Source of the DNA: Phaeosaccion multiseriatum
Taxonomy: Eukaryota; Protista; Ochrophyta, other classes
Reading direction: 5' to 3'
Assembly: GCA_965112735.1 (NCBI GenBank)
Contig: OZ218965.1
Span: 1,674,001 to 1,738,000 of the forward strand
Length of the DNA: 64,000 nt
Of this stretch, positions 7,721 to 62,232 are shown piece by piece (positions within the stretch are counted from its first letter, which is position 1; each line of letters starts with the position of its first letter). A program made the translations under genes and the position numbers. The notes under the pieces are model-generated. The model had not been told where the DNA came from, did not search any database, and saw only the letters and a list, made by a program, of their open reading frames with translations.

Positions 7721-7856
7721 AGCAGCAGACAATGGACTCGAGAGTCAGCCGTGAGGAGAAGGCAAACACCCCCCCCTCACCCTTGAGGCTCCCCAGTTGA
7801 GGGGGGGGTGTTTGCCTTCTCCTCACGGCTGACTCTCGAGTCCATTGTCTACTGCT
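7721..7856. repeat. 59-bp inverted repeat with an 18-nt loop (fold-back hairpin)
   Basis: Arm 7721-7779 is the reverse complement of 7798-7856 with one mismatch. Confidence 0.95.
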
Positions 7857-12542: not shown

Positions 12543-15304
12543 CTACGGAAGGAGGTGGAAGCTTTTGGCTATCGTGGAGAGGGCCTGCTCCTTCGGCCCC
12601 GGCCAGAACCGTTCAGGGCAGAGCGTCGTGAGGGTGAGAATGTCATCGTCCTTGCTCGCGATGACTCCCACATTGTGCAAGAAGACGTTCCTATCCGTCT
12701 TGATGGTGTACTCAAACTGATAAACGAGGCCCCCTTCTCTCTCCTCCTCAAAAGCGTTGATGAGGTTCCACTCCTTGCCGGACCCCGGGGGGGCGATGGC
12801 AGTGGACAGGAGGATCTCGGCGGCTTTCCTGTGGGTCCGGTGCGGTGCAGTGTGTGGTGCGAGCAGGGCAGGGCAATCAATCGTGCAATCGTGCGGCGCG
12901 CAAGGGTTGGGTGGGAGGGCAAGATGGATGAATGTGACACAGCTAGGGTCAGAGGAGGGGAGCACATACATCGAGCGTGCGCGGGGGGTCTTCTCGTAGG
13001 TGCTATACTGCCTCCACTTCAGTTTCAGGTTCGGTTCGATGTACAGCACGTGTGGATCAACCCAAGTCAGGGCAGGCTCCTTCCTCCACGTGCGGCCTGT
13101 GTGATGATGCCACCCCCTGAATCCCCCTCTCTCTCCCCTTCCGTCTCTCTCTCCCTCCCTCCCTCCCCCTCTCCCCCCCCACCTCTCTCTCTCCCTCTCC
13201 TTCCCTCTACCGGATGTAACTCACGTAGGGTCCCCCAGAGTGCCTCTGAGTGAGAAGCCCTGCATGACCTTCGTCTTGATGACCGACACGTTCTCCCTGT
13301 AGTTGCCCCCTGGGGGGCCATATGCGGCGGAGGGCCGGACCTTGAGCTTACGCTGTACACAAAAAACACATGCACACACACACAGGGAGAGAGAGAGAGA
13401 GACACACACACACACACAGGGAGAGAGAGAGAGACACACACACACAGGGAGAGAGAGAGAGACGAACGACACATGCACACACACACACAGGGAGAGAGAG
13501 ACACACACACGAACGACACACGCACACACAAGCAACGGTGATCGTGCGGGTGGGGGAAGCATACGACAGTAGAGCGTGTATATGTGTGAGAGAGAGATAA
13601 GAGAGAAAGACGGAGAGAGTGAGAGACAGAGACAGAGAGAGAGACAGAGAGACAGAGAGAGAAAGGCAGGGCCACTTTCGGACTCGATTCTGAGTGCGGT
13701 CTGTGTACACCTTGAGTCGCATCCAAACAAGCAAAACAGGGGACAGCGTACCTGTTTGGCCACGTCTGTGGGGCTCACGGAGTCTGCAGAAGGCGCTCTA
13801 CCCAACTGAAGAGCCTGATCTCCGAGCCAATCCTTCGGGAACATAAACGTGTAACCGTCAGTCCTGCAGGCGATGGGGCAAAAGAGACAGGGACAAGCGA
13901 GTGGACGGACGCAGGAGAGCAGTAACACAGAGAGCAAAGAGCAAAGATGAGGGGGGGAGATTATGTTTCTCGCACTGGACGAAGGCACCTCCCAGCCAGC
14001 CTCCTTGCCTGCCTGCCTGCCTGCCTGCCTGCCTCACTTGCCTGTCTACGTGGCGCTTGTAACCGTCAATGGGGTACAGCACGTCGAGCTGTGCGGATCT
14101 GCCGAGCTCGCGCGTCTCCGGCGTCATTGACAACACCGATGAGGTCACTCCGAACAGGTTTCCCCCCAGCGCCACCATCAGGGCTGAGAGAGAGAGAGGA
14201 GGGAGGAGAGAGGGATAGCGAGAGAAGGACAAGTATAGAAAGCAGAACAACAAAGAGAGAAAGAGAACGCGGGAAAGCCCGGGTCGGGTCAAGATGTGGG
14301 GAGGGCATGGGAAGTATGTCTTGCTGCTTCGACGAGTAGCTCAGGGTGGCGGCCCAACGAACGTAAAGAAAGCCCATCCCCACACGCACCCACGCACCGA
14401 GAAAGCCGTACAGGATGAAGCGGCCCGGAGCTGCCCAGGAGTTGCGCCCCTTGTAGGACACTGTGTACCGCGTTGTCTCTATTGTGAAGCTCTCTTCGTC
14501 CGCCTTTGGCCGGCGGGAGTGAGTCAGCTCCTGCCAAGCGAGACGTTCGAACAAGTCAGAATGGGAGCAGGCAGTAGAGCATGGAATGGGTCAGGGTCAG
14601 CAGTAGCGGAGCGGGGTGCAGTGCTCCATGCAAAAGGACCGGACGGTGGGGGTGGGGAGAGGGGAACCCCTTGGACGGTGCTCTTTGTTTTAGAGACACA
14701 CTCACACACCCACTAGACGCCTTCACTTGTTCAGCCAGAAAGCAACACCAACTAGGCATGAGTCAGCTGGCTACTGGCGTACCTGAGAGAGGTTAATGGC
14801 GTCCTCACCGATCTCCTTGATAAACTCTGTGCCGAGCGCCAGATTGAGGTTCTCTCTTAGTTCACGGATGGCGAGCTGGGCCTTTTGATCGTAGATGCTC
14901 TCCCCAAAGTCTACCAATGCTTTCTTGGCCCTCTCGTCAAACTCGTTAAACTGGAAGCCGTCGTCAAAGGAAGCCCTTTGAGTCGTCAAAGTGGACGTCT
15001 CTCTCTCTTCCTCATTAGGGGCTTGCACCCTGCCTTGATACTGATCCTCCTCCTGCTGCTCCTGCTGCCGCTGCCGTCTGGCCTCCCCCCTTCCCTCCTT
15101 TCCCTCCCCTGCCGCCATGTACGTCCTCCTCCGACTGCGATGCCGCAGGGTGGCCGGGCCTCGGCAGGACCGAGCAGGATGATAAGAGGAAGAGCAAGGC
15201 GCTGCCGAAAAAGAGAATGCATCAGCCTGCTTCGCCAGAAGGAGGAGTGCCTGGAGCAGGATCCCGGCCGATGCCAGAGAGGATGCTGCTCGCACCATTA
15301 TCAT
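12543..15304 (-). CDS. PsbP-domain protein (PPD7-like), plastid/thylakoid-targeted, multi-exon
   Basis: Signal peptide ...LLLLAKQADA-FSF; VALGGNLFGVTS...LDVLYPIDGYKR; YTFMFPKDWLGDQ; AAYGPPGG..ENVSVI; YQFEYTI...LTLTTLCPE...IAKSFHLLP*. Confidence 0.85.
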
Positions 15305-15443: not shown

Positions 15444-17018
15444 ATGATTGAAAGTGATGTAGCACATAACGGAACGGTTATGGTGGTGAGTCCCTCAAGG
15501 CCTCTCTTTTAAGGAGGAACCGCCCGGTCAACCGGCTTCCTCCTCCCCCTCCAACCTCTTTCTCCATTTCCCCCTTTCCCCCCCTCAGGCGGTGCTCATT
15601 TACTGCGTCAGTGCGGTAGCCCTTGGCGATTTCCTCGTGGGTAGGAAAGCCCTATCCAAAGATGTGTCCCGAAAGATGGTGCACATCGCAGCAGGTGGGC
15701 AACTTTCAACTTTCCTCTTACAGGGTGTGTAGGAGGAACGAAGAGGCAGTATTTCCAGCCCGGTTTGCGCTTCGCGAGGAGTTAATTGCCCCCTTTCCTT
15801 CTATTGGCGCGGGCAGGCTGTTGGCTGCTGTGGTGGCCACTTTTCCGCTCCTCTCACTGGTCGTGGAGGCTCAACGCTGGAGGTGCGTAAGGTGTGAGGT
15901 CCCTCATCTCCTCCTCCTCTCTACCACATGGTGCTATTAAGACCATCAACCTGGGGTGCTTGCCTTTTCAATCTGGGATGCCTTCTACCGGCGGAGGGAA
16001 AGTAATGTCAGCCCTCCTTCCTCCTGTTGTTGCTGCTGCTGCTCTCCTTCTCATTAGCGCCTCTGATATTTGCGGTCAAGCTGCTCGCGAAGGGCTTGTT
16101 GGGGGTGTCGGACCCCAAGAGCGATCCTGACGTGGCCGCCATGACTCGGACAGGCGACCCCAAGGAGCTCCTGGCGGGGCCGCTCTACTTTGCGCTGGTC
16201 ATGGCGGCCGTGGGGCTGCTCCTCTTTCGGGACGAGAGGGCGTTCTTCATCATGGCTTGCCTGGGCTTCGGAGATGGCTTGGCTCCACTGGCAGGGTGAG
16301 GGAGACTGAAGGGGGAGACTAATCCTAGAGTCCAGGAGATGTTGGGTGCATATCCTAATCCTGTCCGTCCCTACGTGGCGCGAGTGTACTACGCACAATG
16401 GCCTGAGGAGCGAGGGCGGGAAGGGGGGGGGAGGGCTAAGGCGTTAGGGAGGGTTCTGTTCTGTTCTGTTCTGTTCTGTTCTGTCCCTCCCTTTTTCCGA
16501 AACACGCAGAGCATAGAGGTCTGTCCACTCGGCTTCGAACACTCACACCTCCCCGCCCTCTCTGGCACAACTGCGATTGCGGTGGTGCCCTGCCCTGCTC
16601 ACTCCTTCTCCACTCCGCGCCCCTCTCTGCACAGCTCGCGCTTCGGGGCCAAGTCCTACAGCTTCCGCTTCCTCGGCCGGCCCAAGACGCTGGCGGGGTC
16701 GCTGGCCTGCTTTGTTGGCTCCGTGGGCGGCATGTATCTGTTCAGTGCCCTCGGGCACGTGCCAAGCCTCGAGTGGCAGACGGCCGTAGGGACAGCTGCT
16801 CTGGCAACGGCGGTGAGTCGGGGAAGAGAGAAGGAAGGGAGGGAGCGAAGTGACACACAGTTTATGGCGAGTATGAATCGCTCCTTCGTGACCTGACTTG
16901 GTGACTCTCTCTCTTGTCCCGTGCGCAGGTGGAGGCCGTAGCCCCGAGCGACTGGGACAATGTGCTCATTCCACTGTCTGTGTTCGGCTTCTTAACGTAC
17001 GGACTCGGCAGTCCTTGA
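15444..17018 (+). CDS. Phytol/farnesol kinase-like (VTE5/FOLK, CTP-dependent polyprenol kinase family), complete copy, 6 exons
   Basis: MIESDVAHNGTVMV|AVLIYC...SKDVSRKMVHIAAG|CWLLWWPLF...|TRTGDPKELLAGPLYF...GFGDGLAPLAG|...KTLAGSLACF|VEAVAPSDWDNVLIPL...*; all introns GT-AG. Confidence 0.88.
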
Positions 17019-19138
17019 TTTCGTTCCCTTGCATGTACGACGGAGCGAGCGAGGGCGGAGGATGGCGGAGCCAGTGCTTGACAGCAGCTCACTCGGGACG
17101 CGTGGTCGTCTTATCGCTTGCGGCTTCGTTGTGGGCGAGGTTGTTTGACTGCCGCACGGGACTGTGCTCGCCGGTCATGGCCATTTGAGAGCAAGTGCTA
17201 TGGATACCGATTCACCTCTTTTGTCAAGAGTGGAGCAGCTGCGAGCGTCCTTGCCCGCCCCCTGCGCCGCCTCAGCCGAGAAGAGCTTTACTCAAGGGGA
17301 GGGCGAGATGGGTGACGAGACAGTAGAGGATTCATCTGGAAGAAGAAGAGAAGGGTGCCGTGCAGACTGAATCCAGAATCCGGAGCTGCGCACCACGCGG
17401 GAAAGCATACAGCGGTGAGAAATGGATGAATGCGATGGAGGGCCTCTCCTCCTTACACGGCGTGTCTCTCAGCAAAGTGCATGTGCGCGCGCGTGGAGTA
17501 AGAGGGAGCCCTCTCGCTCAACTTGACTCGTGGGTGCGTGCGTGTGCCCTTCGGCTCCATTGCTGGCTGCTTGCCCTGACACCCCCCGGCACACCCCAAG
17601 CCTCGGCCAAGCCTCTACCAGTGAAGCAGCAGACGGCAGGTGGGTCCAGAGCTGAAGAGAAGAAGCACACACTTAGCACCTACCAGTGATCCAGAGCTGA
17701 AGAGAGAGAGAGAGAGAGGATTTTTTTTTCCCTGAGGAGGGGTACGTAGCTATCGTAATAAACTCTGTATTTTTTTGGTTCTTTACACTACTGAGTGAAT
17801 CAGTTCTTTACACTACTGCACGAATCAGCCTCTGGTTGGGTTGGTTACGGGGGCAGACCCGCAGCAGCCTGTGCAGCTGCGTGGACCTCGCCCCCCCTCC
17901 TCCAACAATATTATACTCATCCCTTTTTTCCTCCTTCTACACTTACTTCCATACCCAATACGCGTACTCTCAAAGCGCAAGCAATAGAGCGGTGGTTGAC
18001 TTAACTCCGCCCCCTCTCTTTTGCTTGACGCTTGACTCGCTGCTGCTCCTCGCCCCCGCCCCCCCCGATTTTTTCTCTCTGATCCCCTTTCTACAAACTT
18101 AACCATACTTAAAAATGTACCTACTATACCAGAACGCGTGTCTCGTATGTGGCGGTCCTCGCTCCTTCCCGCCTCTTTTCCTTGTTGAACTCGACCAGTC
18201 GCCGATCGATCCAGAGTGTGCCGCAAAGCAACGCACGTAGAAGAGAAGAGAGAAGGAGGAGGAGGGCGACTCGGAGAGCCTCGGACCCGAAGGTCCTTCC
18301 CTCTCTTCGCTCTCCACTCGGGCTGCCACGCATTCACGCGAAACCGCCCCCCCTCTCCCGCCTCTCTCACGAGTTGAACATTCCACGTGGAACATTCGAT
18401 GCAGGCCGTAGCTACCGAGGAATCCCCCCCCTCCAGCCATCCAGTAGTGGGGGACGCGGTGTCGACTCGGTAGTAGCTCTTGGCCTTACTGTCGTCGCGG
18501 CGCCGCCTCAGAGCTCCAGCTCGAACACTTCCTCCGATCCACCAGTTGAAGGTGCACCAGGTGCTGAGGTGGAGCACCTGCTGCTGTTGTTGGTCGCGGC
18601 CATGGAGTGGAAGATGTGATCGTCCTCCTCGAGAAACACGCGGCGTAGCTCCGGAAGTGTGATCCGCTGCAGCTGCGAGGAGGGGAGGCGGGAGCTCACC
18701 AGCCTAAGAAACATGAGAAACCCACACTGCTCTTGCTCCCGCCGCAGGAATTCCTCCTCGATCAATCTCTGCTTCTCTTCCGCAATGGACCAAGCCGAGT
18801 TTCCCGCGCTCGATGGTAGCCCCCCCCTTCTCGCCCCGCGAGGCACCTTGACCGAAGGCGACCGTGGCGAAGGTGAGAGTGCCATGGCTGTGGCGCGGGA
18901 ATAAACGAGGTCAAAGCGTTCGCTTTACTTTTGCCGCCGGTTCGGCCCTGCCTGCTCAGTGCTCCGCTGCTCCTGCGTCGCTAAATAGGTCTGTAGTCCT
19001 CCGTCCCTGCGATCTCTAGCGTGCTCGTTTGGCTCTCAATGCTGTAGCCATGAAAACGATGAGGGTGAGAGATGAACAAAAGAAAGGGGGGGGGGGGGAA
19101 GTGCAAATGCCTGTAAACCCCTAATTTTTCCATTTGAC
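15625..19138 (+). repeat. Segmental duplication copy 1 (~3.5 kb)
   Basis: Colinear with 21666-25272 from GGCGATTTCCTCGTGGG to TTTTCCATWTGAC. Confidence 0.95.
18508..19051 (-). pseudogene. Hypothetical gene copy 1; putative first exon frameshifted
   Basis: ORF 18885-18508 is shared with copy 2. The upstream ATG at 19051 reaches a stop after 11 codons because of one extra A. Confidence 0.35.
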
Positions 19139-21665
19139 AACGAAAGAAATTTTTTTTCCTTCTTATCCTTCCTTATGGTAGTCGATGGAGCGACTTTTTC
19201 CCTACGCCAGCACTATGAACTGCTGACTATGAAGCCGATTCTTCAGCAGGGGGCTATGCTGACAAGGGACTTGAGGCGGCCTGCGCCTGGGGAGGAGTTC
19301 AACAACTCCCTCTTAGAGCCACAGCTGACGTGCCCATCGCCAGGACAGCTCGAGCAGCAGAGGCGGCTGAGAGAGGGGCGTGTGCCTTTGGTAGCAGCAA
19401 CTGCTGCGGCTGCGGCTGCGAGTAGCGCCGAGGCGTGCACCCTGCGGGAGCAAGTCTCTTCCCTCTCTTCGGAGGGAGGAAGCGTGCCTGATAGCGGTGC
19501 CAGTGGTCAACCGGCCGCACTTCCCGATGAACCACGGCAGAGGGCCTTGAAGATGGGCAAGAAGTGCGGGCATTATCAGAATGCTAAGAGGGGTGGCGTG
19601 AGCGTGCACACAGAAGGGACGAAGAAGACTTGCGCCGTGCCCGATGCCGAGAAGCGGCCCAGGAAGCGCAATCGCAAGGGCGAGCTCATTCCAGAGAGCC
19701 AGTCCGCCAGAAAGATGTATGGTGGGGCTTGTGGATGTGATTTTTGCAGTTCATTCGCAACTTCTGGGCCTTAGGGAAGCCAAGAATGTAAATAAAGGGG
19801 GGGCAAAGCTCTTTGTATGTTGTTCATCCACCAGCTAGTCGCCAGTTGTGGTAGGGGAATTTTTATTTTAATTGGCTGGCCCTTCGGGCCAGCCATATTA
19901 GATTAGATCCCTTTAGCACGATATTCCCCCTCATTAAGAGGGTCAACGCTGCTTAAAGGACCACAACTGCTCCATTCCAGCAGCAGTAATGGCTTGGTGA
20001 AGGCTTGCTCATGGCAGGAAGGTGGCAGGGCTGGTAGTAGCAGCAGCAGTCAAGCAAAAAAAAAAACATACCAGCAAGCAGCAGAGACAAATGGAGGAGA
20101 ATGAAGAAGCTGCAGCGGGGCAGCACAAAAGGAAGGAACAGCAACCTGGGTGACAGTCCTGAAGAGATTTCTGGCGCTCAGGGCTCTGAGAATACGAGTG
20201 GAAAGGCCGCAGGAGCGCATGACGACGATGGCCGTGGTTGGGACGACGAGACTTGGACGCAAGCCGTTGCTCTGGCAGATGGAGCAGCTGCGGCGGCACA
20301 ACCAGCGACCGCTTCGAAACCGGGCACTCAAGCGGCAGTGGAGACTGAGCTTGCGACCATCGCCGCAGCACAGGAGGAGACACGGTGAACCAATTGCAGA
20401 CAGCTAAGCAGAGATTGAAAATCGAGAAGGCGGCTGTAGAAGATGCTTACAAAGTTCGAGGAGGACGAGGCCGGCCTCTGAAGGGAATAAACGAGAAACT
20501 GCGGTTGAATGGTGCAGCTATGAAAGGAATTGATGAGGATTTCCTTCTCCCAGCGGGCTGTGACATGTCTTCGAGCGCAGGCAGGGTAGATGGTGCAAGT
20601 GATGACCACTTCGTAGGGTTTTCTTCGCCGCCCCTTGGTCGCACGTCTAAGCGGTACGTTCTCAATTATCTCCTCTTCTTTCTTGATGCCTGGCTGCTCT
20701 TGTCCACGCCCCCCGCCCACTCTCGGGCCGCCCTTTCTGAACATACCTTGACACACTTTAATCCCCCTGTTGTTCTCGCCCCCTTTTTACATCTTTTTTT
20801 GTGTGAACAGGGGTGAGAAAGACGAGGATGAGGACGAGGAGGATGGAAATACGGGCGACAAGGGGGGCGGTGGTGCTGGGGGGGGGTTTGGGAAGAAGAA
20901 TAGACCACCAGCGCAGACTGAGTTCATCCAAGTCGCACTCGAGGCGGCAAGGGATCCAAAGGAAGGGTTGCCTACCTGGCAAACTCCATACTACAGGGCC
21001 TCGACGCCAAGCCGCCAGTCTCAAGTGGGAGGGTATGCCCAACGAGACGTTTGTCTGTTCCCCCCCCCCCCACCTCTTCCACAACCTTGAAGAGGACCAG
21101 CAGCAGCCTCTTTGCGCATGGGATGCATCGTCAGAGTGTGTACAAGCTTATGGGTGGACGTCGCCGCAGCGGGCTGTGTCTGTCACCAGCCTCGAGCAGG
21201 AGGAGGAGGGGAGGGGGGGGAGAGGAGGAGGAGGAGGACCATCATCATCAGCAGAAAGAGAATCACAAGGAGGAGGAGGGGGGGGGGAAGCAGGGGGAGA
21301 ATCAGCTGTGGGAGGAGGAGGAGGAGGAGGAGGAGGAGGAGGAGGAGGAGGAACAGCAGGAGTAGGAGTAGCAGGTGGTGCTGCTGCTGGAGAAGACGGG
21401 GGGGGGGGGGGGGGGGCAAGAGATGCAGGTGCTGCTGAGGCTGGAGAAGGAGGGGGGGAAGGAGGAGGAGGAGGAGGAGGAGGAGGAGGTGTAACAGGAG
21501 GAGGGGGAGGAGGAGCAGCAGCAGCAGCAGCCACCGCAGCACTGTGGCCGGCACGGGGAGGATCGGGAGCAGGAGCATCTGTTGCGCCTGCAGAGGCTGC
21601 TGCTGCAGAGGGTGGTGTGGAGGAGGTGAGAGTACTCACGAGAGGCAGCTATGGAAGAGGAGGGA
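19139..21665 (+). mobile_element. Degenerate, circularly permuted DNA-transposon-like insert (3' part, joined ends, 5' part)
   Basis: Unique sequence between the duplicated blocks. ORF 19175-19774 ends in a Cys/His cluster (CGHY..H..C...CGCDFC) followed by AATAAA. Nested inverted repeats are centred on 19884. A frameshifted N-terminal-like coding region runs from 20091 to about 21200. Confidence 0.55.
21200..21630. repeat. Low-complexity (GAG/GGA/GCA)n tract
   Basis: Poly-GGA/GAG and G runs. Confidence 0.9.
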
Positions 21666-23070
21666 GGCGATTTCCTCGTGGGTAGGAAAGCCCTATCCAA
21701 AGATGTGTCCCGAAAGATGGTGCACATCGCAGCAGGTCGGCAACTTTCAACTTTCCTCTTACAGGGTGTGTAGGAGGAAGGAAGAGGCAGTATTTCCAGC
21801 CCGGTTTGCGCTTCGCGAGGAGTTAATTGCCCCCTTTCCTTCTATTGGCGCGGGCAGGCTGTTGGCTGCTGTGGTGGCCGCTTTCCCGCTCCTCTCACTG
21901 GTCGTGGAGGCTCAACGCTGGAGGTGCGTAAGGCGTGAGGTCCCTCTTCTCCTCCTCCTCTCTACCACATGGTGCTATTAAGACGATCAACCTGGGGTGC
22001 TTGCCTTTTCAATCTGGGATGCCTTCTACCGGCGGAAGGAAAGTAATGTCAGCCCTCCTTCCTGCTGTTGCTGCTGCTGCTCTCTTTCTCATTAGCGCCT
22101 CTGATATTTGCGGTCAAGCTGCTCGCGAAGGGCTTGTTGGGGGTGTCGGACCCCAAGAGCGATCCTGACGTGGCCGCCATGACTCGGACAGGCGACCCCA
22201 AGGAGCTACTGGCGGGGCCGCTATACTTTGCGCTGGTCATGGCGGCCGTGGGGCTGCTCCTCTTTCGGGACGAGAGGGCGTTCTTCATCATGGCTTGCCT
22301 GGGCTTCGGAGATGGCTTGGCTCCACTGGCAGGGTGAGGGAGACTGAAGGGGGAGACTAATCCTAGAGTCCAGGAGATGTTGGGTGCATATCCTAATCCT
22401 GTCCATCCCTACGTGGCGCGAGTGTACTACGCACAATGGCCTGAGGAGCGATGGCGGGAAGGGGGGGGCGGGGAGGGCTAAGGCGTTAGGGGTGGTTCTG
22501 TTCTGTTCGGTTCTGTCCCTCCCTTTTTCCGAAACACGCAGAGCATAGAGGGGGTGAAAGGGACTGCGCGGTCTGTGCACTCGGCTTCGAACACTCACAC
22601 CTCCCCGCCCTCTCTGGCACAACTGCGATTGCGGTGGTGCCCTGCCCTGCTCACTCCTTCTCCACTCCGCGCCCCTCTCTGCACAGCTCGCGCTTCGGGG
22701 CCAAGTCCTACAGCTTCCGCTTCCTCGGCCGGCCCAAGACGCTGGCGGGGTCGCTGGCCTGCTTTGTTGGCTCCGTGGGCGGCATGTATCTGTTCAGTGC
22801 CCTCGGGCACGTGCCAAGCCTCGAGTGGCAGACGGCCGTAGGGACAGCTGCTCTGGCAACGGCGGTGAGTCGGGGAAGAGAGAAGGAAGGGAGGGAGCGA
22901 AGTGACACACAGTTTATGGCGAGTATGAATCGCTCCTTCGTGACCTGACTTGGTGACTCTCTCTCCTGTCCCGTGCGCAGGTGGATGCCGTAGCCCCGAG
23001 CGACTGGGACAATGTGCTCATTCCACTGTCTGTGTTCGGCTTCTTAACGTACGGACTCGGCAGTCCTTGA
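21651..23070 (+). CDS. 5'-truncated duplicate of the phytol/farnesol kinase with a new in-frame ATG; possibly a pseudogene
   Basis: Lacks exon 1 and the start of exon 2. ATG at 21651 gives MEEEG-GDFLVGRK.... Remaining exons are intact, with F>S and VEA>VDA substitutions. Confidence 0.6.
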
Positions 23071-25272
23071 TTTCGTTCCCTTGCACGTACGACGGAGCGA
23101 GCGAGGGCGGAGGATTGCTGCCGGTGCTTGACAGCAGCTCACTCGGGAGTCGTGGTCGTCTTATCGCTTGCGGCTTCGTTGTGGGCGAGGTTGTTTGACT
23201 GCCGCACGGGACTGTACTCGCCGGTCGTGGTCATTTGAGAGCAAGTGCTGGAGATGGGGGATGGATTGGCAACGCTATGGATACCGATTCACCTCTTTTG
23301 TCAAGAGTGGAGCAGCTGTGAGTGTTCTTGCCCGCCCCTGCCTCGCCTCAGCCGAGAAGAGCTTTGACTCAAGGGGAGGGCGAGATGGGTGACGAGAGAA
23401 AGGGAGGCTGTGTGGAAGGGAAGACAGGAGGCTTCATCTGGAAGAAGAAGAAGAAGAAGAGCAAGAAGAAGAAGAGAAGGGTGCCGTGCAGAATGAATCC
23501 GGAGCGGCGCACCACGCGGGCAAGCATACAGCGGTGAGAAATGGATGAATGCGATGGAGGGCCTCTCCTCCTTACACGGCGTGCCTCTCAGCAAAGTGCA
23601 TGTGCGCGCGCGTGGAGTAAGAGGGAGCCCTCTCGCTCAACTTGACTCGTGGGTGCGTGCGTGTGCCCTTCGGCTCCATTGCTGCTTGCCCTGACACCCC
23701 CCGGCACACCCCAAGCCTCGGCCAAGCCTCTACCAGTGAAGCAGCAGATGGCAGGTGGATCCAGAGCTGAAGAGAGAGAGAGAGGAGGTTTCTCACACTA
23801 AGCACCTACCAGTGAAACAAAAGACTACAGGTAGATCCAGAGCTGAAGAGAGAGAGAGAGAGAGAGAGAAGAGAGGAGATTGGTCACTCGAAGAGAGGAG
23901 TGCTATCGTAATAAACTCTGTATTTTTTTGGTTCTTTACACTACTGAGTGAATCAGTTCTTTACACTACTGCACGAATCAGCCTCTGGTTGGGTTGGTTA
24001 CGGGGGCAGGCCCGCAGCAGCCTGTGCAGCTGCGTGGACCTCGCCCCCCCTCCTCCAACAATATTATACTCACCCCTTTTTTCCTCCTTCTACACTTACT
24101 TCCATACCCAATACGCGTACTCTAAAAGCGCAAGCAATAGAGCGGTGGTTGACTTAACTCCGCCCTCTCTCTTTGCTTGACGCTTGACTCGCTGCTGCTC
24201 CTCGCCCCCGCCCCCCCCGATATTTAACTCAGTACGTCTACTAATGAATACATCATAAAACTACAAACTTAACCATACTTAACATGTATACCTACTATAC
24301 CACACAGAGCGCGTGTCTCGTATGTGGCGGTCCTCCTTCCCGCCTTTTCCTTGTTGAACTCGACCAGTCGCCGATCGATCCAGAGTGTGCCGCAAAGCAA
24401 CGCACGTAGAAGAGAAGAGAGAAGGAGGAGGAGGGCGACTCGGAGAGCCTCGGACCCGAAGGTCCTTCCCTCTCTTCGCTCTCCACTCGGGCTGCCACGC
24501 ATTCACGCGAAACCGCCACCCCTCTCCCGCGCCTCCTCTCGCGAGTTGAACATTCGATGCAGGCCGTACCGAGGAATCCCCCCCCCCCCAGCCATCCAAT
24601 AGTGGGGGACGCGGTGTCGACTCGGTAGTAGCTCTTGGCCTTACTGTCGCGGCGCCGCCTCAGAGCTCCAGCTCGAACACTTCCTCCGGTCCACCAGTTG
24701 AAGGTGCACCAGGCGCTGAGGTGGAGCACCTGCTGCTGTTCTTGGCCGCGGCCATGGAGTGGAAGATGTGATCGTCCTCCTCGAGAAACACGCGGCGTAG
24801 CTCCGGAAGTGTGATCCGCTGCAGCTGCGAGGAGGGCAGGCGGGAGCTCACCACCCTAAGAAACATGAGAAACCCACACTGCTCTTGCTCCCGCCGCAGG
24901 GATTCCTCCTCGATCAATCTCTGCTTCTCTTCCGGAATGGACCAAGCCGAGCTTCCCGTGCTCGAGGGCAGCCCCCCCCTTCTCGCCCCGCGAGGCACCT
25001 TGACCGAAGGCGACCGTGGCGAAGGTGAGAGTGCCATGACTGTGGCGCGGGAACAAACGAGGTCAAAGCGTTCGCTTTACTTTTGCCCGCCGGTTCGGCC
25101 CTGCTCACTGCTCCGCTGCTCCTGCGTCGCTAAATAGGTGTATAGCCCTCCGTCCCTGTGATCTCTAGCGTGCTCGTTGGCTCTCAATGCTCTGTACCCA
25201 TGAAAACGATGAGGGTGAATCGAAGAGCTGGCACGTGCAAATGCCCGTATACCCCTAACTTTTCCATATGAC
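21666..25272 (+). repeat. Segmental duplication copy 2 (~3.6 kb)
   Basis: Direct repeat of 15625-19138 with scattered substitutions and indels. Confidence 0.95.
24660..25201 (-). pseudogene. Hypothetical gene copy 2; putative first exon frameshifted differently
   Basis: ORF 25037-24660. The ATG at 25201 reaches TGA after 5 codons because of a 2-nt insertion. Confidence 0.35.
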
Positions 25273-25339: not shown

Positions 25340-26765
25340 ATGGCCTCAGCAGCAGAGACAGGGGCTCCTGTCGAGGAGAGGAGCTGGGTAGACGAGAGCC
25401 TCAGCAGGTTCGTACTCTTCGTGCTGCGCTACCCTGCTGCTGCTGCTGGTGCTGCTGCTGCTATGGGGGGAGGACCGAATATTATATTCGTGACAGACAT
25501 AGTATCCCTCTGTCTCCCCCCCCCCCTTCTCAGATATGGCAACCCTCGCCGCTTCTTCGGCGGGGGAGGAGGACCCTCTGCGCCCGCTCGTAAACTCGTC
25601 GAGGAGAGAGTGCTCGACGAAGGCACGGAAAACTGCCAACTACGCGGTAAGACTCTCTCTCTCTCTCTCTCTCTCTCTCTTAGTATCGACTGCAGCATCG
25701 ACGAATGCCCCCTCACAGTTTTCCCCTTTCCTCCTGCTCCTATGTTTTCCCAGTGTATCTTTCCAAGGAGTACGCTTTCTGGTAAGCCCGCATTCTGACC
25801 CACTCTTGGCGAGGGTGGGGCATGAATCTCTGGATGCTAACGGCCGGTTGGTGTCTGGATGGTATCCCTCCCTGCCTAACTTTCCTGTCTGCGTGGCGCT
25901 TATACCCGTCAATGGGGTGTAACACGTCGAGCTGTGCCGGTCTGCCGAGCTCCCGCCGAGGGGGAAGTCTTTGGATGCTACTGTGTGCCTTGAAGAAGAC
26001 AAGTGTCTATCCTCGTTTTTATGCCCATGATGCCCTATCTAGGGCTACTTGTGTCTGCCTGACAAAGGTAATCAGCACCCCATCAGTTAAATGAAGGCTG
26101 TGCTTGTCTCCCCCCCGCCTGCTCCGGTACATACGCAGGCACAAGTTCACCCTCGATTTCGAGTTCGCAAAGGCTGACGTGGAGGGAGAGGGAGAGAAGA
26201 CGGTCTTCACATTAGTCTTTGACAGGTACTACTTATTGCTAGCGGTAGGGAACGGAACTGGAGGCTGCGCGCGTGGTGCAAGGCGTGCCGTTCTCTTGTG
26301 CCTGATAAGAGTCGCTCCCTCCTCCTCCTTCACTTGTTGAGCCAATCGCCTCTCCCCCCCACCCCCCACCCCTTTCACACTACACACTCTTTCCTCGCTT
26401 GGCGCTCAGCTGGCGGAGCGAGCTGACAGTGAAGGAGGACGGCGAAGTCAAGTATGAGGAGCTGCAAAAGTGAGTCGCCAAGGGATGTGTGGCCGCCACT
26501 GGGAGGCACGTGCGAAAGGGATAGAGTACACACCCTTCTTTCTTTTCCATTCGCTACTCGGTGCAGATTGTGAGGCACGCCATTGTGTACTCATGCCCCG
26601 CACGCACGCGCGCACGCACGTACTTCTCACAGGCCCTTTATCGGAGGAACATGGACCGCGGAAACCAAGTTCGGTCAAGTTATCGCAAAGATTACGCCCG
26701 GGTTCCTGAACAACGAGTACACGCTGGACATGGGGGGTAAGCAAATCTTCATCACTTACCTGTAG
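25340..26765 (+). CDS. Small hypothetical beta-rich protein, about 6 exons
   Basis: GT-AG exon chain MASAAETG...|YGNPRRFF...|VYLSKEYAFW|HKFTLDFEF...FTLVFD|WRSELTVKEDG...|PFIGGTWTAETKFG...NEYTLDMGGKQIFITYL*. Confidence 0.6.
25872..25955 (-). pseudogene. Diverged copy of part of a PPD7-like exon plus its donor site, inside an intron
   Basis: RELGRPAQLDVLHPIDGYKRHADRK|gttagg versus RELGRSAQLDVLYPIDGYKRHVDRQ|gtgagg at about 14030-14112. Confidence 0.8.
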
Positions 26766-46757: not shown

Positions 46758-48567
46758 AAGACAGAGAGAGAGACAGACAGAGAAAGAAAGAGAGAGAGAG
46801 AGAGAGTCGGCGAGAGAGAGAGAGACAGAGAAAGAGACGAAAAGGAAGGAGTGGGTGGGGGTGAGTAAGAGGAGAGAGACGGCACTTGATGGCACTTGGA
46901 AATGGGGAGGAAGGGAGACCCTCTTACTCGCTTGTTGTTCGCGCTACTGCCTCAACACGAACTTTCTTCTGCTCCTTCTCCGGCCTCCTAGCTCCTATCC
47001 CTTTTCTCCTGCCACTCTCTCACTGCCCATCCCCTGACCATCCACTGCCATCTCCCCCCCTCCCATACAGAGCCGCGATGGGGTCAAGCGCACCAAGGAG
47101 GAGGAGGAGAGGGCGGCGACGTACGTGTTCAAAGCCACGCAGCGCTTCCGACTCGCACACGAGGACATTGTCCAGGCCATAGACGAAAGAGTTAAGGTAC
47201 GTAACAGTGTGTGACAGTCACACATGAGAGTTACGTGAGACTCACGTAAGAGTACCGACGTCAGTGCCCGGTGTCAGGTTGCACACGCACATGCACACGC
47301 ACGCACACACGCATACACCCATATACACACACGCACACACGCACACACGCACACACGCACACACGAATTGAATCCCCGCTCCATTCTCTGCTTCGCTCCC
47401 GACATCGACACGCACGCACGTACGCACACACGCACGCACGCACACACAGTCCACGGCCAAAATGCTGAAGAAGACAGAGACGTCCGTCATCATCAACATC
47501 CTCGAGGGGGCGGTGGGTGACACCGACGGAGTGTACAGACAGAAGAAGTGAGTCAGTCAGTCAGTCAGTCATTGTAGAGAGGTTAGGAGGGGAGTGCATG
47601 AGGCAGGGACCGTCACGCCTCACATGTTCTCAACGTACGTTGTAAGACTCATGCCTCTCTCTCTCGTCCTTGTCTTCTGAAACGCCATTTGTTCTGTAAC
47701 AGTGCACCGCCTATCGACGAAGAGGCGCTCAAGGCGAAGGCCCAAAAGGGGAGGATCTACAAGGGCGGCCTCAACGTCTCGCCAGAGGTCCTCAGAGACA
47801 CCTTCTCCAGTAAGTCACTCAAATCTTTCGCACGTCAGCCATGGAAGCTGCTTTCTTGGGGATTCATCCTCTTGGTTCCCTCATCTTATCACTTCCATCC
47901 CTCCCTACCTCCCTCCTTCCCTCCCTCCCTACCTCCCTCCCTCCCTCCCTCCCTCTCTCCCTCCCTCCCTCCCTCCCTCCCTCCAATCCCTCCTCCGCAA
48001 ATACAAGCGCAACTCCAAAAGGAGATCCGAAGCCGCGACAAGGTCATCCTAAAAGACGTCATGGCACTTGAGGAGGACGGAATGAACGACTTCATGGCAG
48101 AGGCAGGGGCAAACATCATCCTGCCGGACTCGTGGAGATCCGACCCCGACCATCTAGGTGGGTGAGCTTGGGTATTGGGTGGGTGAGCTTGGGTATTGGG
48201 TGGGTGAGGTTGGGTACGTGGATGGACGAGGTTGGGTATTGGGTGGATGAGGTTGGGTATTAGGTGGGTGAGGTTGGGTATTGGGTGGGTGAGGTTGGGT
48301 ACGTGGATGGACGAGGTTGGGCATTGGGTGGGTGAGGTTGGGTACCTGGATGGACGAGGTTGGGTGGGTGAGTTTGGGTATTGGGTAGGTGAGGTTGGGT
48401 ACTGGGTGGGTGAAGTTGGGTATTGGGTGGGTGAGGTTGGGTACACCTGGATGGATGAGGTTGGATATTGGGTGGATGAGGCTTGGTATTGGGTGGGTGG
48501 GGTTGGGTTGGGAACCGCTCCCAAAGACGAACCGACACGCATGTGTGAAAGAGGACGCCAAACATAC

Positions 48568-62042: not shown

Positions 62043-62232
62043 CGTATGCCCTCTTCCCCAACATACCCGTATACGCCCTCTCCCCTCTTCCCCAACATAC
62101 CCGTATACGCCCTCTTCCCTCTTCCCCAACATACCCGTATACGCCCTCTTCCCTCTTCCCCAACATACCCGCATACGCCCTCTCCCCTCTTACCCAACAT
62201 ACCCGTATACGCCCTCTCCCCTCTCACCCAAT
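62043..62232. repeat. 34-bp minisatellite, about 5.5 copies
   Basis: Unit GTATACGCCCTCTYCCCTCTTCCCCAACATACCC in tandem. Confidence 0.92.

What the first reader, a model, noticed from the sequence alone, without database searches (positions are those of the whole stretch)
15625..25272. Inside-out transposon flanked by a 3.5-kb direct duplication: possible integrated circular intermediate
Seen: the layout is A - insert - A'. The left edge of A (kinase 5' end) and the right edge of A' (next gene) are the native contexts. The insert reads 3'-terminal exon + stop + AATAAA, then a symmetric junction, then a 5'-like coding region on the same strand. Inference: this is what results if an element that had captured segment A between its ends circularised and recombined into the native A, or if an end-joined transposon circle was opened internally and captured at a break with a very large duplication. 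Established: end-joined circles with short spacers are intermediates of bacterial IS3/IS256-type copy-out/paste-in transposition. A chromosomal fossil of one that duplicated host genes in an alga would be notable.
Basis: partly seen in the sequence, partly recalled or inferred. Interest (0 to 1): 0.85.

Follow-up and report, generated by a model that had tools for sequence, protein, structure and literature searches.

The report
Inside-out dead transposon between duplicated genes
A 3.5-kb stretch of an algal chromosome is duplicated around the joined tail and head of a dead Dada-type transposon; the layout is real and odd, but it does not by itself prove that a transposon circle carried the host gene.

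Summary
The layout is real. A (15625-19138) and A' (21666-25272) are 97.3% identical with 44 indels. Between them lie 2527 bp: the tail of a decayed Dada-like transposase gene, a structured 127-nt junction, then a probable head. A Logan contig (L001), 81% identical to the tail, matches Dada-1_ES from Ectocarpus by eye (15/46 residues); no HMM confirmed it. L001 carries the same 22-nt palindrome, TTC loop included. So the palindrome is a family feature, more likely a terminal hairpin than two 10-bp TIRs with a chance spacer; the true joint may lie at 19896-19909. The 5'-truncated kinase copy in A' keeps its frame and splice sites (3 synonymous, 2 replacement changes, no indels), so A and A' look like alleles joined recently. 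Best reading: a one-unit slice of an end-joined element (circle or head-to-tail dimer) was captured at the junction of a tandem duplication. Circle versus dimer is undecided. An unchecked scan note reports a 5050-letter tandem pair with a DUF6729-like relic on another piece of this genome.

The parts
15625..19138 (.). Segment A, first copy of the 3.5-kb direct duplication (right edge could be as far as 19153)
15444..17018 (+). Intact host gene, phytol/farnesol (dolichol-type) kinase-like by motif; exons 15444-15485, 15589-15694, 15817-15882, 16058-16295, 16635-16812, 16929-17018
   Evidence: exon model and translation; family from recalled motifs, not confirmed by HMM exon by exon
18508..18885 (-). 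125-codon ORF present in both copies; coding status unproven (4 synonymous, 10 replacement differences)
   Evidence: no Pfam or NCBIfam hit
19139..21665 (+). Insert, 2527 bp: element tail, junction, element head
19182..19774 (+). C-terminal relic of a Dada-like transposase, ending in a Cys/His cluster and a stop; 17-bp (frameshifting) and 24-bp deletions relative to L001
   Evidence: by-eye match of L001 to Dada-1_ES
19791..19796 (+). AATAAA, candidate polyadenylation signal (not conserved in L001)
19843..19852 (+). Subterminal 10-mer CAGTTGTGGT, identical in L001
19873..19895 (.). Hairpin 1: perfect 10-bp stem, TTC loop (GAA loop closed by C-G on the - strand); 22 nt identical in L001. Either two TIRs plus spacer or a terminal hairpin of the tail
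19896..19909 (.). 14-nt linker with a short ATTAG repeat; holds the midpoint (19906) between the two 10-mers; candidate true tail/head joint
   Evidence: inference
19910..19959 (.). Hairpin 2: imperfect 50-nt stem-loop (z about -2.5, moderate)
19960..19969 (-). Inverted copy of the subterminal 10-mer
   Evidence: 3% of comparable window pairs hold such a match
20091..21200 (+). Frameshifted, intron-bearing coding relic resembling the Dada N-terminus (AT-hook-like GRGRP, then a short Trp/Tyr/Pro motif)
   Evidence: by eye against Dada-1_LB; no database hit
21201..21665 (+). Low-complexity GGA/GAG/CAG tract; ends in an ATG at 21651 in frame with the truncated kinase of A'
21666..25272 (.). Segment A', second copy of the duplication
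21666..23070 (+). 5'-truncated kinase copy: lacks exon 1 and 12 codons of exon 2; frame, stop and all splice dinucleotides kept

Best explanation
The insert is a circularly permuted piece of a dead, non-autonomous Dada-like element: tail, end junction, head. It comes from an end-joined form of the element, either a free circle or a chromosomal head-to-tail dimer. It was captured as filler in one complex repair or template-switch event that joined the end of A on one chromosome copy to the start of A' on another, probably the homologue, giving A - insert - A'. The transposase did not make the outer joints, which fall inside the element. The palindrome at the junction is a conserved end feature of the family, more likely a terminal hairpin than TIR-spacer-TIR. 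Shown: duplication, order of the pieces, decay, conservation of the palindrome. Inferred: Dada identity (by eye), allelic origin of A and A', the donor, the repair mechanism.
For: Outer joints are at internal positions of the element and show no target duplication. Both halves are decayed, and window and L001 diverged without codon bias (25/18/27 changes by codon position; 11 synonymous, 31 replacement), while the last 28 nt are identical (chance about 0.02 at 86% identity). Kinase exons in A': 3 synonymous and 2 replacement changes, no indel in 642 nt, against 2-3% substitutions and 44 indels outside. Head-to-tail pairs are known for Dada-U1 (PMC3706591) and arise by double insertion in P and hobo (10.1101/158386). 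An unchecked scan note describes a 5050-letter tandem pair with a DUF6729-like relic on another piece of this genome, twice the insert's length.
Against: No intact copy, donor or other haplotype could be examined. A random filler would rarely hold an end junction, which favours a circle over a chance slice. The selection signal in A' is weak when introns alone set the neutral rate (P 0.14, Fisher P 0.07). The right half has no database support as a transposase piece. That the tandem pair elsewhere belongs to this family is unverified.
Confidence: 0.5

Rival explanations
1. One reading: an element captured segment A between its ends (Pack-type), was excised and end-joined into a circle, and the circle recombined into native A.
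For: One crossover explains both duplication edges coinciding with the insert edges and the inside-out order. The ends are intact, so a transposase in trans could act. End-joined circles are known for IS256-family elements (PMC7780238) and Sleeping Beauty (PMC6943129), and Dada is a distant IS256/MuDR relative.
Against: Needs three rare steps in quick succession if A and A' are alleles. IS256-type spacers are 6-8 bp taken from donor flank and vary; here the same TTC stands in a diverged relative. No A-carrying element is known.
Confidence: 0.2
2. The mobile unit is a non-autonomous rolling-circle (Helitron2-like) element carrying a dead Dada gene as cargo; circles, tandems and host capture are then its normal behaviour.
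For: Two hairpins and an asymmetric inverted repeat. On the - strand hairpin 1 starts with T and has a GAA loop closed by C-G, as at FoHeli1/2 5' ends (PMC5148889), and the 10-mer lies right before hairpin 2, as for a 3'-ATIR (PMC3627910). Coding diverged neutrally while the hairpin did not. An unchecked note reports a similar head-to-tail dimer with a GCGAAGC hairpin in this genome.
Against: The 5' partner of the inverted repeat is 43-50 nt from the end and outside the hairpin, unlike Helitron2 (0-2 bp). No Rep/helicase sequence. The Dada start and stop sit 120 and 70 nt from the 10-mers, as expected if the ends are Dada's own. L001 has G, not T, at the candidate 5' base.
Confidence: 0.12
3. 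A head-to-tail dimer inserted at this locus, or elements stood at opposite borders of A on two homologues; unequal crossover made the duplication and later deletions removed both outer ends.
For: Uses only ordinary events; allelic-looking divergence of A and A'; double insertion is common.
Against: Needs two independent deletions that each stop at the native edge of A without removing or leaving extra host sequence.
Confidence: 0.1
4. Assembly artefact: two haplotypes placed in tandem through a multi-copy repeat.
For: 2.7% substitutions plus many indels with conserved exons is what two haplotypes look like. Reads could not be checked.
Against: No gap. Both hybrid joints (A to element interior, element interior to A') would have to exist independently on the two haplotypes at opposite ends of the same 3.5 kb.
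Confidence: 0.08

Closest known systems
Dada DNA transposons, exonuclease-bearing branch (Dada-1_ES Ectocarpus, Dada-1/2_LB Laccaria; PMC3706591; Dada-1_Ec32 in PMC12477816)
   Same: C-terminal region matches Dada-1_ES by eye through L001 (F-x2-WA-x2-WN and 15/46 ungapped identities); terminal Cys/His cluster; introns; short subterminal inverted repeats; head-to-tail pairs and internally deleted derivatives are described.
   Different: No catalytic core or exonuclease in the insert; no small-RNA gene target nearby; no 6-7-bp TSD visible; strong hairpins at the ends. The termini and TSD of the Ectocarpus family are listed as unresolved.
Head-to-tail dimers of DNA transposons formed by double insertion (P, hobo; 10.1101/158386)
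   Same: Tail-to-head junction with a short spacer.
   Different: There both elements keep their outer ends; here both outer ends are missing and host DNA is duplicated.
Copy-out/paste-in circles of IS256 (ISCth4; PMC7780238) and excision circles of Sleeping Beauty (PMC6943129)
   Same: Joined ends; distant relationship of Dada to IS256/MuDR.
   Different: Spacers there are variable and flank-derived (6-8 bp for ISCth4); no circle is shown here.
Helitron2 / FoHeli (PMC3627910, PMC5148889)
   Same: Hairpins at both ends, GAA-loop hairpin, asymmetric inverted repeat, joined ends and tandems.
   Different: 5' repeat not terminal and not part of the hairpin; no RepHel; cargo is Dada-like.
Maize Ac/fAc reversed-ends transposition and Composite Insertions (PMC3744419, PMC4270019)
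   Same: Transposon-associated tandem direct duplication with transposon DNA at the junction.
   Different: There the transposon termini flank the inserted DNA; here the termini face each other in the middle and the outer joints are internal.

Membership tests
Dada | Transposase homologous to Dada transposases | tested here: inconclusive
   By-eye match of L001 to Dada-1_ES C-terminal region, 15/46 ungapped; window tail is 86% identical to L001 in coding. No Pfam, Atlas or HMMER support.
Dada | DDE triad with DxxH motif (and DEDDy exonuclease in the ES/LB branch) | not testable with these tools
   That part of the gene is absent from the insert and from L001.
Dada | C-terminal CCHC zinc finger | tested here: inconclusive
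   Cys/His cluster at 19553-19635; first Cys is Gly in the window and Cys in L001, spacing longer than in Dada-U6_DR.
Dada | No TIRs; short subterminal inverted repeats at equal distance from the TSD | tested here: inconclusive
   Met if the joint is near 19906 (10-mers 50 nt either side of a 7-nt core); not met if the 10-bp arms of hairpin 1 are TIRs.
Dada | 6-7-bp TSD | not testable with these tools
   No solo copy with flanks was available; L001 stops one base after the hairpin.
Dada | Insertion into tRNA, snRNA or 5S genes | tested here: inconclusive
   No such gene at the junction or in the window, but the outer ends are missing, so the original target is not represented.
IS256/IS3-type circle junction | [quoted passage not shown] | tested here: not met
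   Same TTC in the window and in the 81%-identical L001; a fixed target could rescue it but is not shown.
IS256/IS3-type circle junction | Free circular form | not testable with these tools
Helitron2 | Hairpins at both termini | tested here: met
   Hairpin 1 (z about -5.7) and hairpin 2 (z about -2.5), if the joint lies between them.
Helitron2 | 5'-ATIR 0-2 bp from the 5' end and part of the 5' hairpin | tested here: not met
   The 10-mer lies 43-50 nt from the candidate end and outside either hairpin.
Helitron2 | RepHel partner with the same ends | not testable with these tools
   No genome-wide search available.
Pack-type element carrying A | Head - captured host segment - tail, present as a unit | not testable with these tools
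   Not seen in the window; both outer edges of the duplication are in host context.

The most novel reading that the evidence does not exclude
Exonuclease-type Dada elements of algae have hairpin-defined ends and move through an end-joined circle with a fixed junction. One such circle, carrying or copying segment A from the homologue, integrated here and made a second kinase gene with a new in-frame start codon (21651) supplied by the element.
Probability: 0.15. Interest if true: 0.8.

Novelty: new variant of a known kind. Interest (0 to 1): 0.45.

Why it matters
The ends of the exonuclease-bearing Dada branch are undefined in the curated Ectocarpus library, and Dada's habit of carrying a fixed short sequence into its target is unexplained. 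A junction that shows both ends together gives candidate ends (two hairpins and a subterminal 10-mer) and a direct PCR test for circles. If circles are found, a eukaryotic DDE superfamily would gain an IS256-like intermediate and a route to host gene duplication. If not, the locus is a tidy example of a tandem duplication with transposon filler, which is of modest interest.

Tried and rejected
Junction and end patterns found nothing in metagenome, genome or viral contigs; protein-based locus scans found nothing. Protein searches: only P0001/L001 for the tail; P0002 is an unrelated repeat protein on a 3.2-Mb contig with bacterial-type genes and was rejected; nothing for two head pieces (these see only proteins of 0.55-1.75 times the query length, so the blank says little). 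Atlas hits were below 0.9 (TP6A_N) or absent. Nine window ORFs are not in the protein collection, so the species could not be named; SRR29999185 is in no held paper. A weak likeness between the start and the end of the insert (20/29, P 0.005-0.04) and between the 5' part of L001 and the low-complexity tract (2% of windows as good) were judged too weak to use. Spliced models were searched exon by exon by reference only; the joined kinase model was used only inside a script to count codon changes and was sent to no search tool. Dada sequences from the paper's supplement have no reference here and were compared by eye only.

Full report
Observation. The window holds a direct duplication, A 15625-19138 and A' 21666-25272, with 3341 matches and 93 mismatches in a local alignment, or 91 substitutions and 44 indel events globally. 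There is no assembly gap. The left edge of A falls 12 codons into exon 2 of an intact gene whose motifs I recognise from memory as phytol/farnesol-kinase-like; exon-by-exon HMM scans did not confirm this. The 2527-bp insert reads: ORF 19175-19774 with stop, AATAAA at 19791, a perfect 10-bp palindrome around TTC at 19873-19895, then broken coding pieces on the same strand.

What the insert is. A protein search with the left ORF found one relative, P0001, on a 973-bp Logan contig, L001. L001 is 81% identical to 19226-19894 and extends further into the gene. Its translation carries F-x2-WA-x2-WN and a following stretch that matches Dada-1_ES of Ectocarpus at 15 of 46 ungapped positions (by eye; PMC3706591 Dataset S1). 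That stretch lies near the C-terminus of Dada transposases. The right half has an AT-hook-like GRGRP and two short motifs that recall the N-terminus of Dada-1_LB (by eye), but no search supports this. So tail-then-head order is well supported for the tail and only plausible for the head. Both halves are dead: the tail has 17-bp and 24-bp deletions relative to L001 and the head has frameshifts. Window and L001 differ evenly over codon positions (25, 18, 27; 11 synonymous, 31 replacement), so the two lineages diverged without selection on the protein.

The junction. L001 ends with the same palindrome, TTC loop included; the last 28 aligned bases are identical against 86% identity in coding (chance about 0.02). 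If the arms were two TIRs and TTC a chance spacer, L001 would have to be a second tail-to-head junction with the same spacer. That is possible for a strictly target-specific element, or if both descend from one old junction, but it is simpler if the whole palindrome belongs to the tail. Folding shows more structure: an outer 10-bp repeat (19843-19852 with 19960-19969) encloses hairpin 1 and a second, imperfect hairpin at 19910-19959 (z -5.7 to -6.5 for the whole; about -2.5 for hairpin 2 alone). The midpoint between the 10-mers is 19906, inside the 14-nt linker between the hairpins. Dada elements are described as lacking TIRs and having short subterminal inverted repeats at equal distance from a 6-7-bp TSD, which fits a joint in that linker. 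The two hairpins, the GAA loop and the asymmetric repeat also recall Helitron2 ends, but the 5' repeat is not terminal, so that membership test fails. I put about two to one on the hairpin reading over the TIR reading; this is judgement, and one unchecked note calls related elements TIR-bounded.

The duplication. The kinase copy in A' lacks its first 26 codons yet keeps its frame, stop and splice dinucleotides, with 3 synonymous and 2 replacement changes and no indel in 642 nt. Had it decayed since the copies split, about 5-7 replacement changes would be expected (P 0.14 with the intron rate, 0.02 with all non-coding). This suggests, without proving, that A and A' diverged as working alleles and were joined recently, or that the truncated copy is still used: an ATG at 21651 in the insert is in frame with it. 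Neither outer joint coincides with an element end and no target duplication is seen, so the transposase did not make those joints.

Mechanism. The reading with fewest steps is one repair or template-switch event that joined the end of A to the start of A' on another chromosome copy through a piece of end-joined element (0.5). The piece may come from a free circle or from a chromosomal head-to-tail dimer; loop-out from a dimer would itself give a circle of one unit plus spacer. Dimers are documented for Dada-U1 and for P and hobo. An unchecked scan note describes a tandem pair of 5050 letters with a DUF6729-like relic on another piece of this genome; twice the insert is 5054, which would fit an exact one-unit permutation, but I could not see that locus. 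A rolling-circle carrier (0.12), a local dimer trimmed by two deletions (0.1) and mis-assembly of two haplotypes (0.08) are the other rivals.

Novelty and verdict. End-joined circles, transposon dimers and transposon-linked tandem duplications are all known; I found no held paper on this combination, which is weak evidence of novelty. What is new is a candidate pair of ends for an algal Dada-like family whose Ectocarpus counterpart has unresolved termini, with a conserved hairpin that invites a test for circles. Novelty: new variant of a known kind. Interest 0.45. Spliced models were searched exon by exon only.

Noticed in passing
window 21651-21735: An ATG in the insert is in frame with the truncated kinase of A' (MEEEGG replaces the first 26 residues); a possible chimeric gene.
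   Followed up: partly
window 14024-14113 and 25867-25956: A dispersed 90-nt repeat, 87% identical, in two other genes' non-coding DNA.
   Followed up: no
window 7753-7824: Long fold-back that just passes Rfam's mir-30 gathering score (51 against 50.2); probably a generic hairpin match, but a candidate hairpin-RNA locus (also note s1-343480).
   Followed up: partly
window 48136-48534: Tandem array of a 21-nt unit rich in GGGT.
   Followed up: no
window 62049-62231: Tandem repeat of a 68-nt unit, 94% identical.
   Followed up: no
window 18508-18885 (-) and its copy near 24660-25040: ORF kept open in both copies but with mostly replacement differences; whether A holds a second real gene is unresolved.
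   Followed up: partly
L001 1-330: Degenerate Dada-like coding sequence upstream of the part shared with the window; shows that longer relics of this family exist in sample SRR29999185.
   Followed up: partly
L002 10001-12205: P0002, a 734-aa protein of about eight 68-residue repeats near an integrase on a 3.2-Mb contig; unrelated false hit.
   Followed up: no
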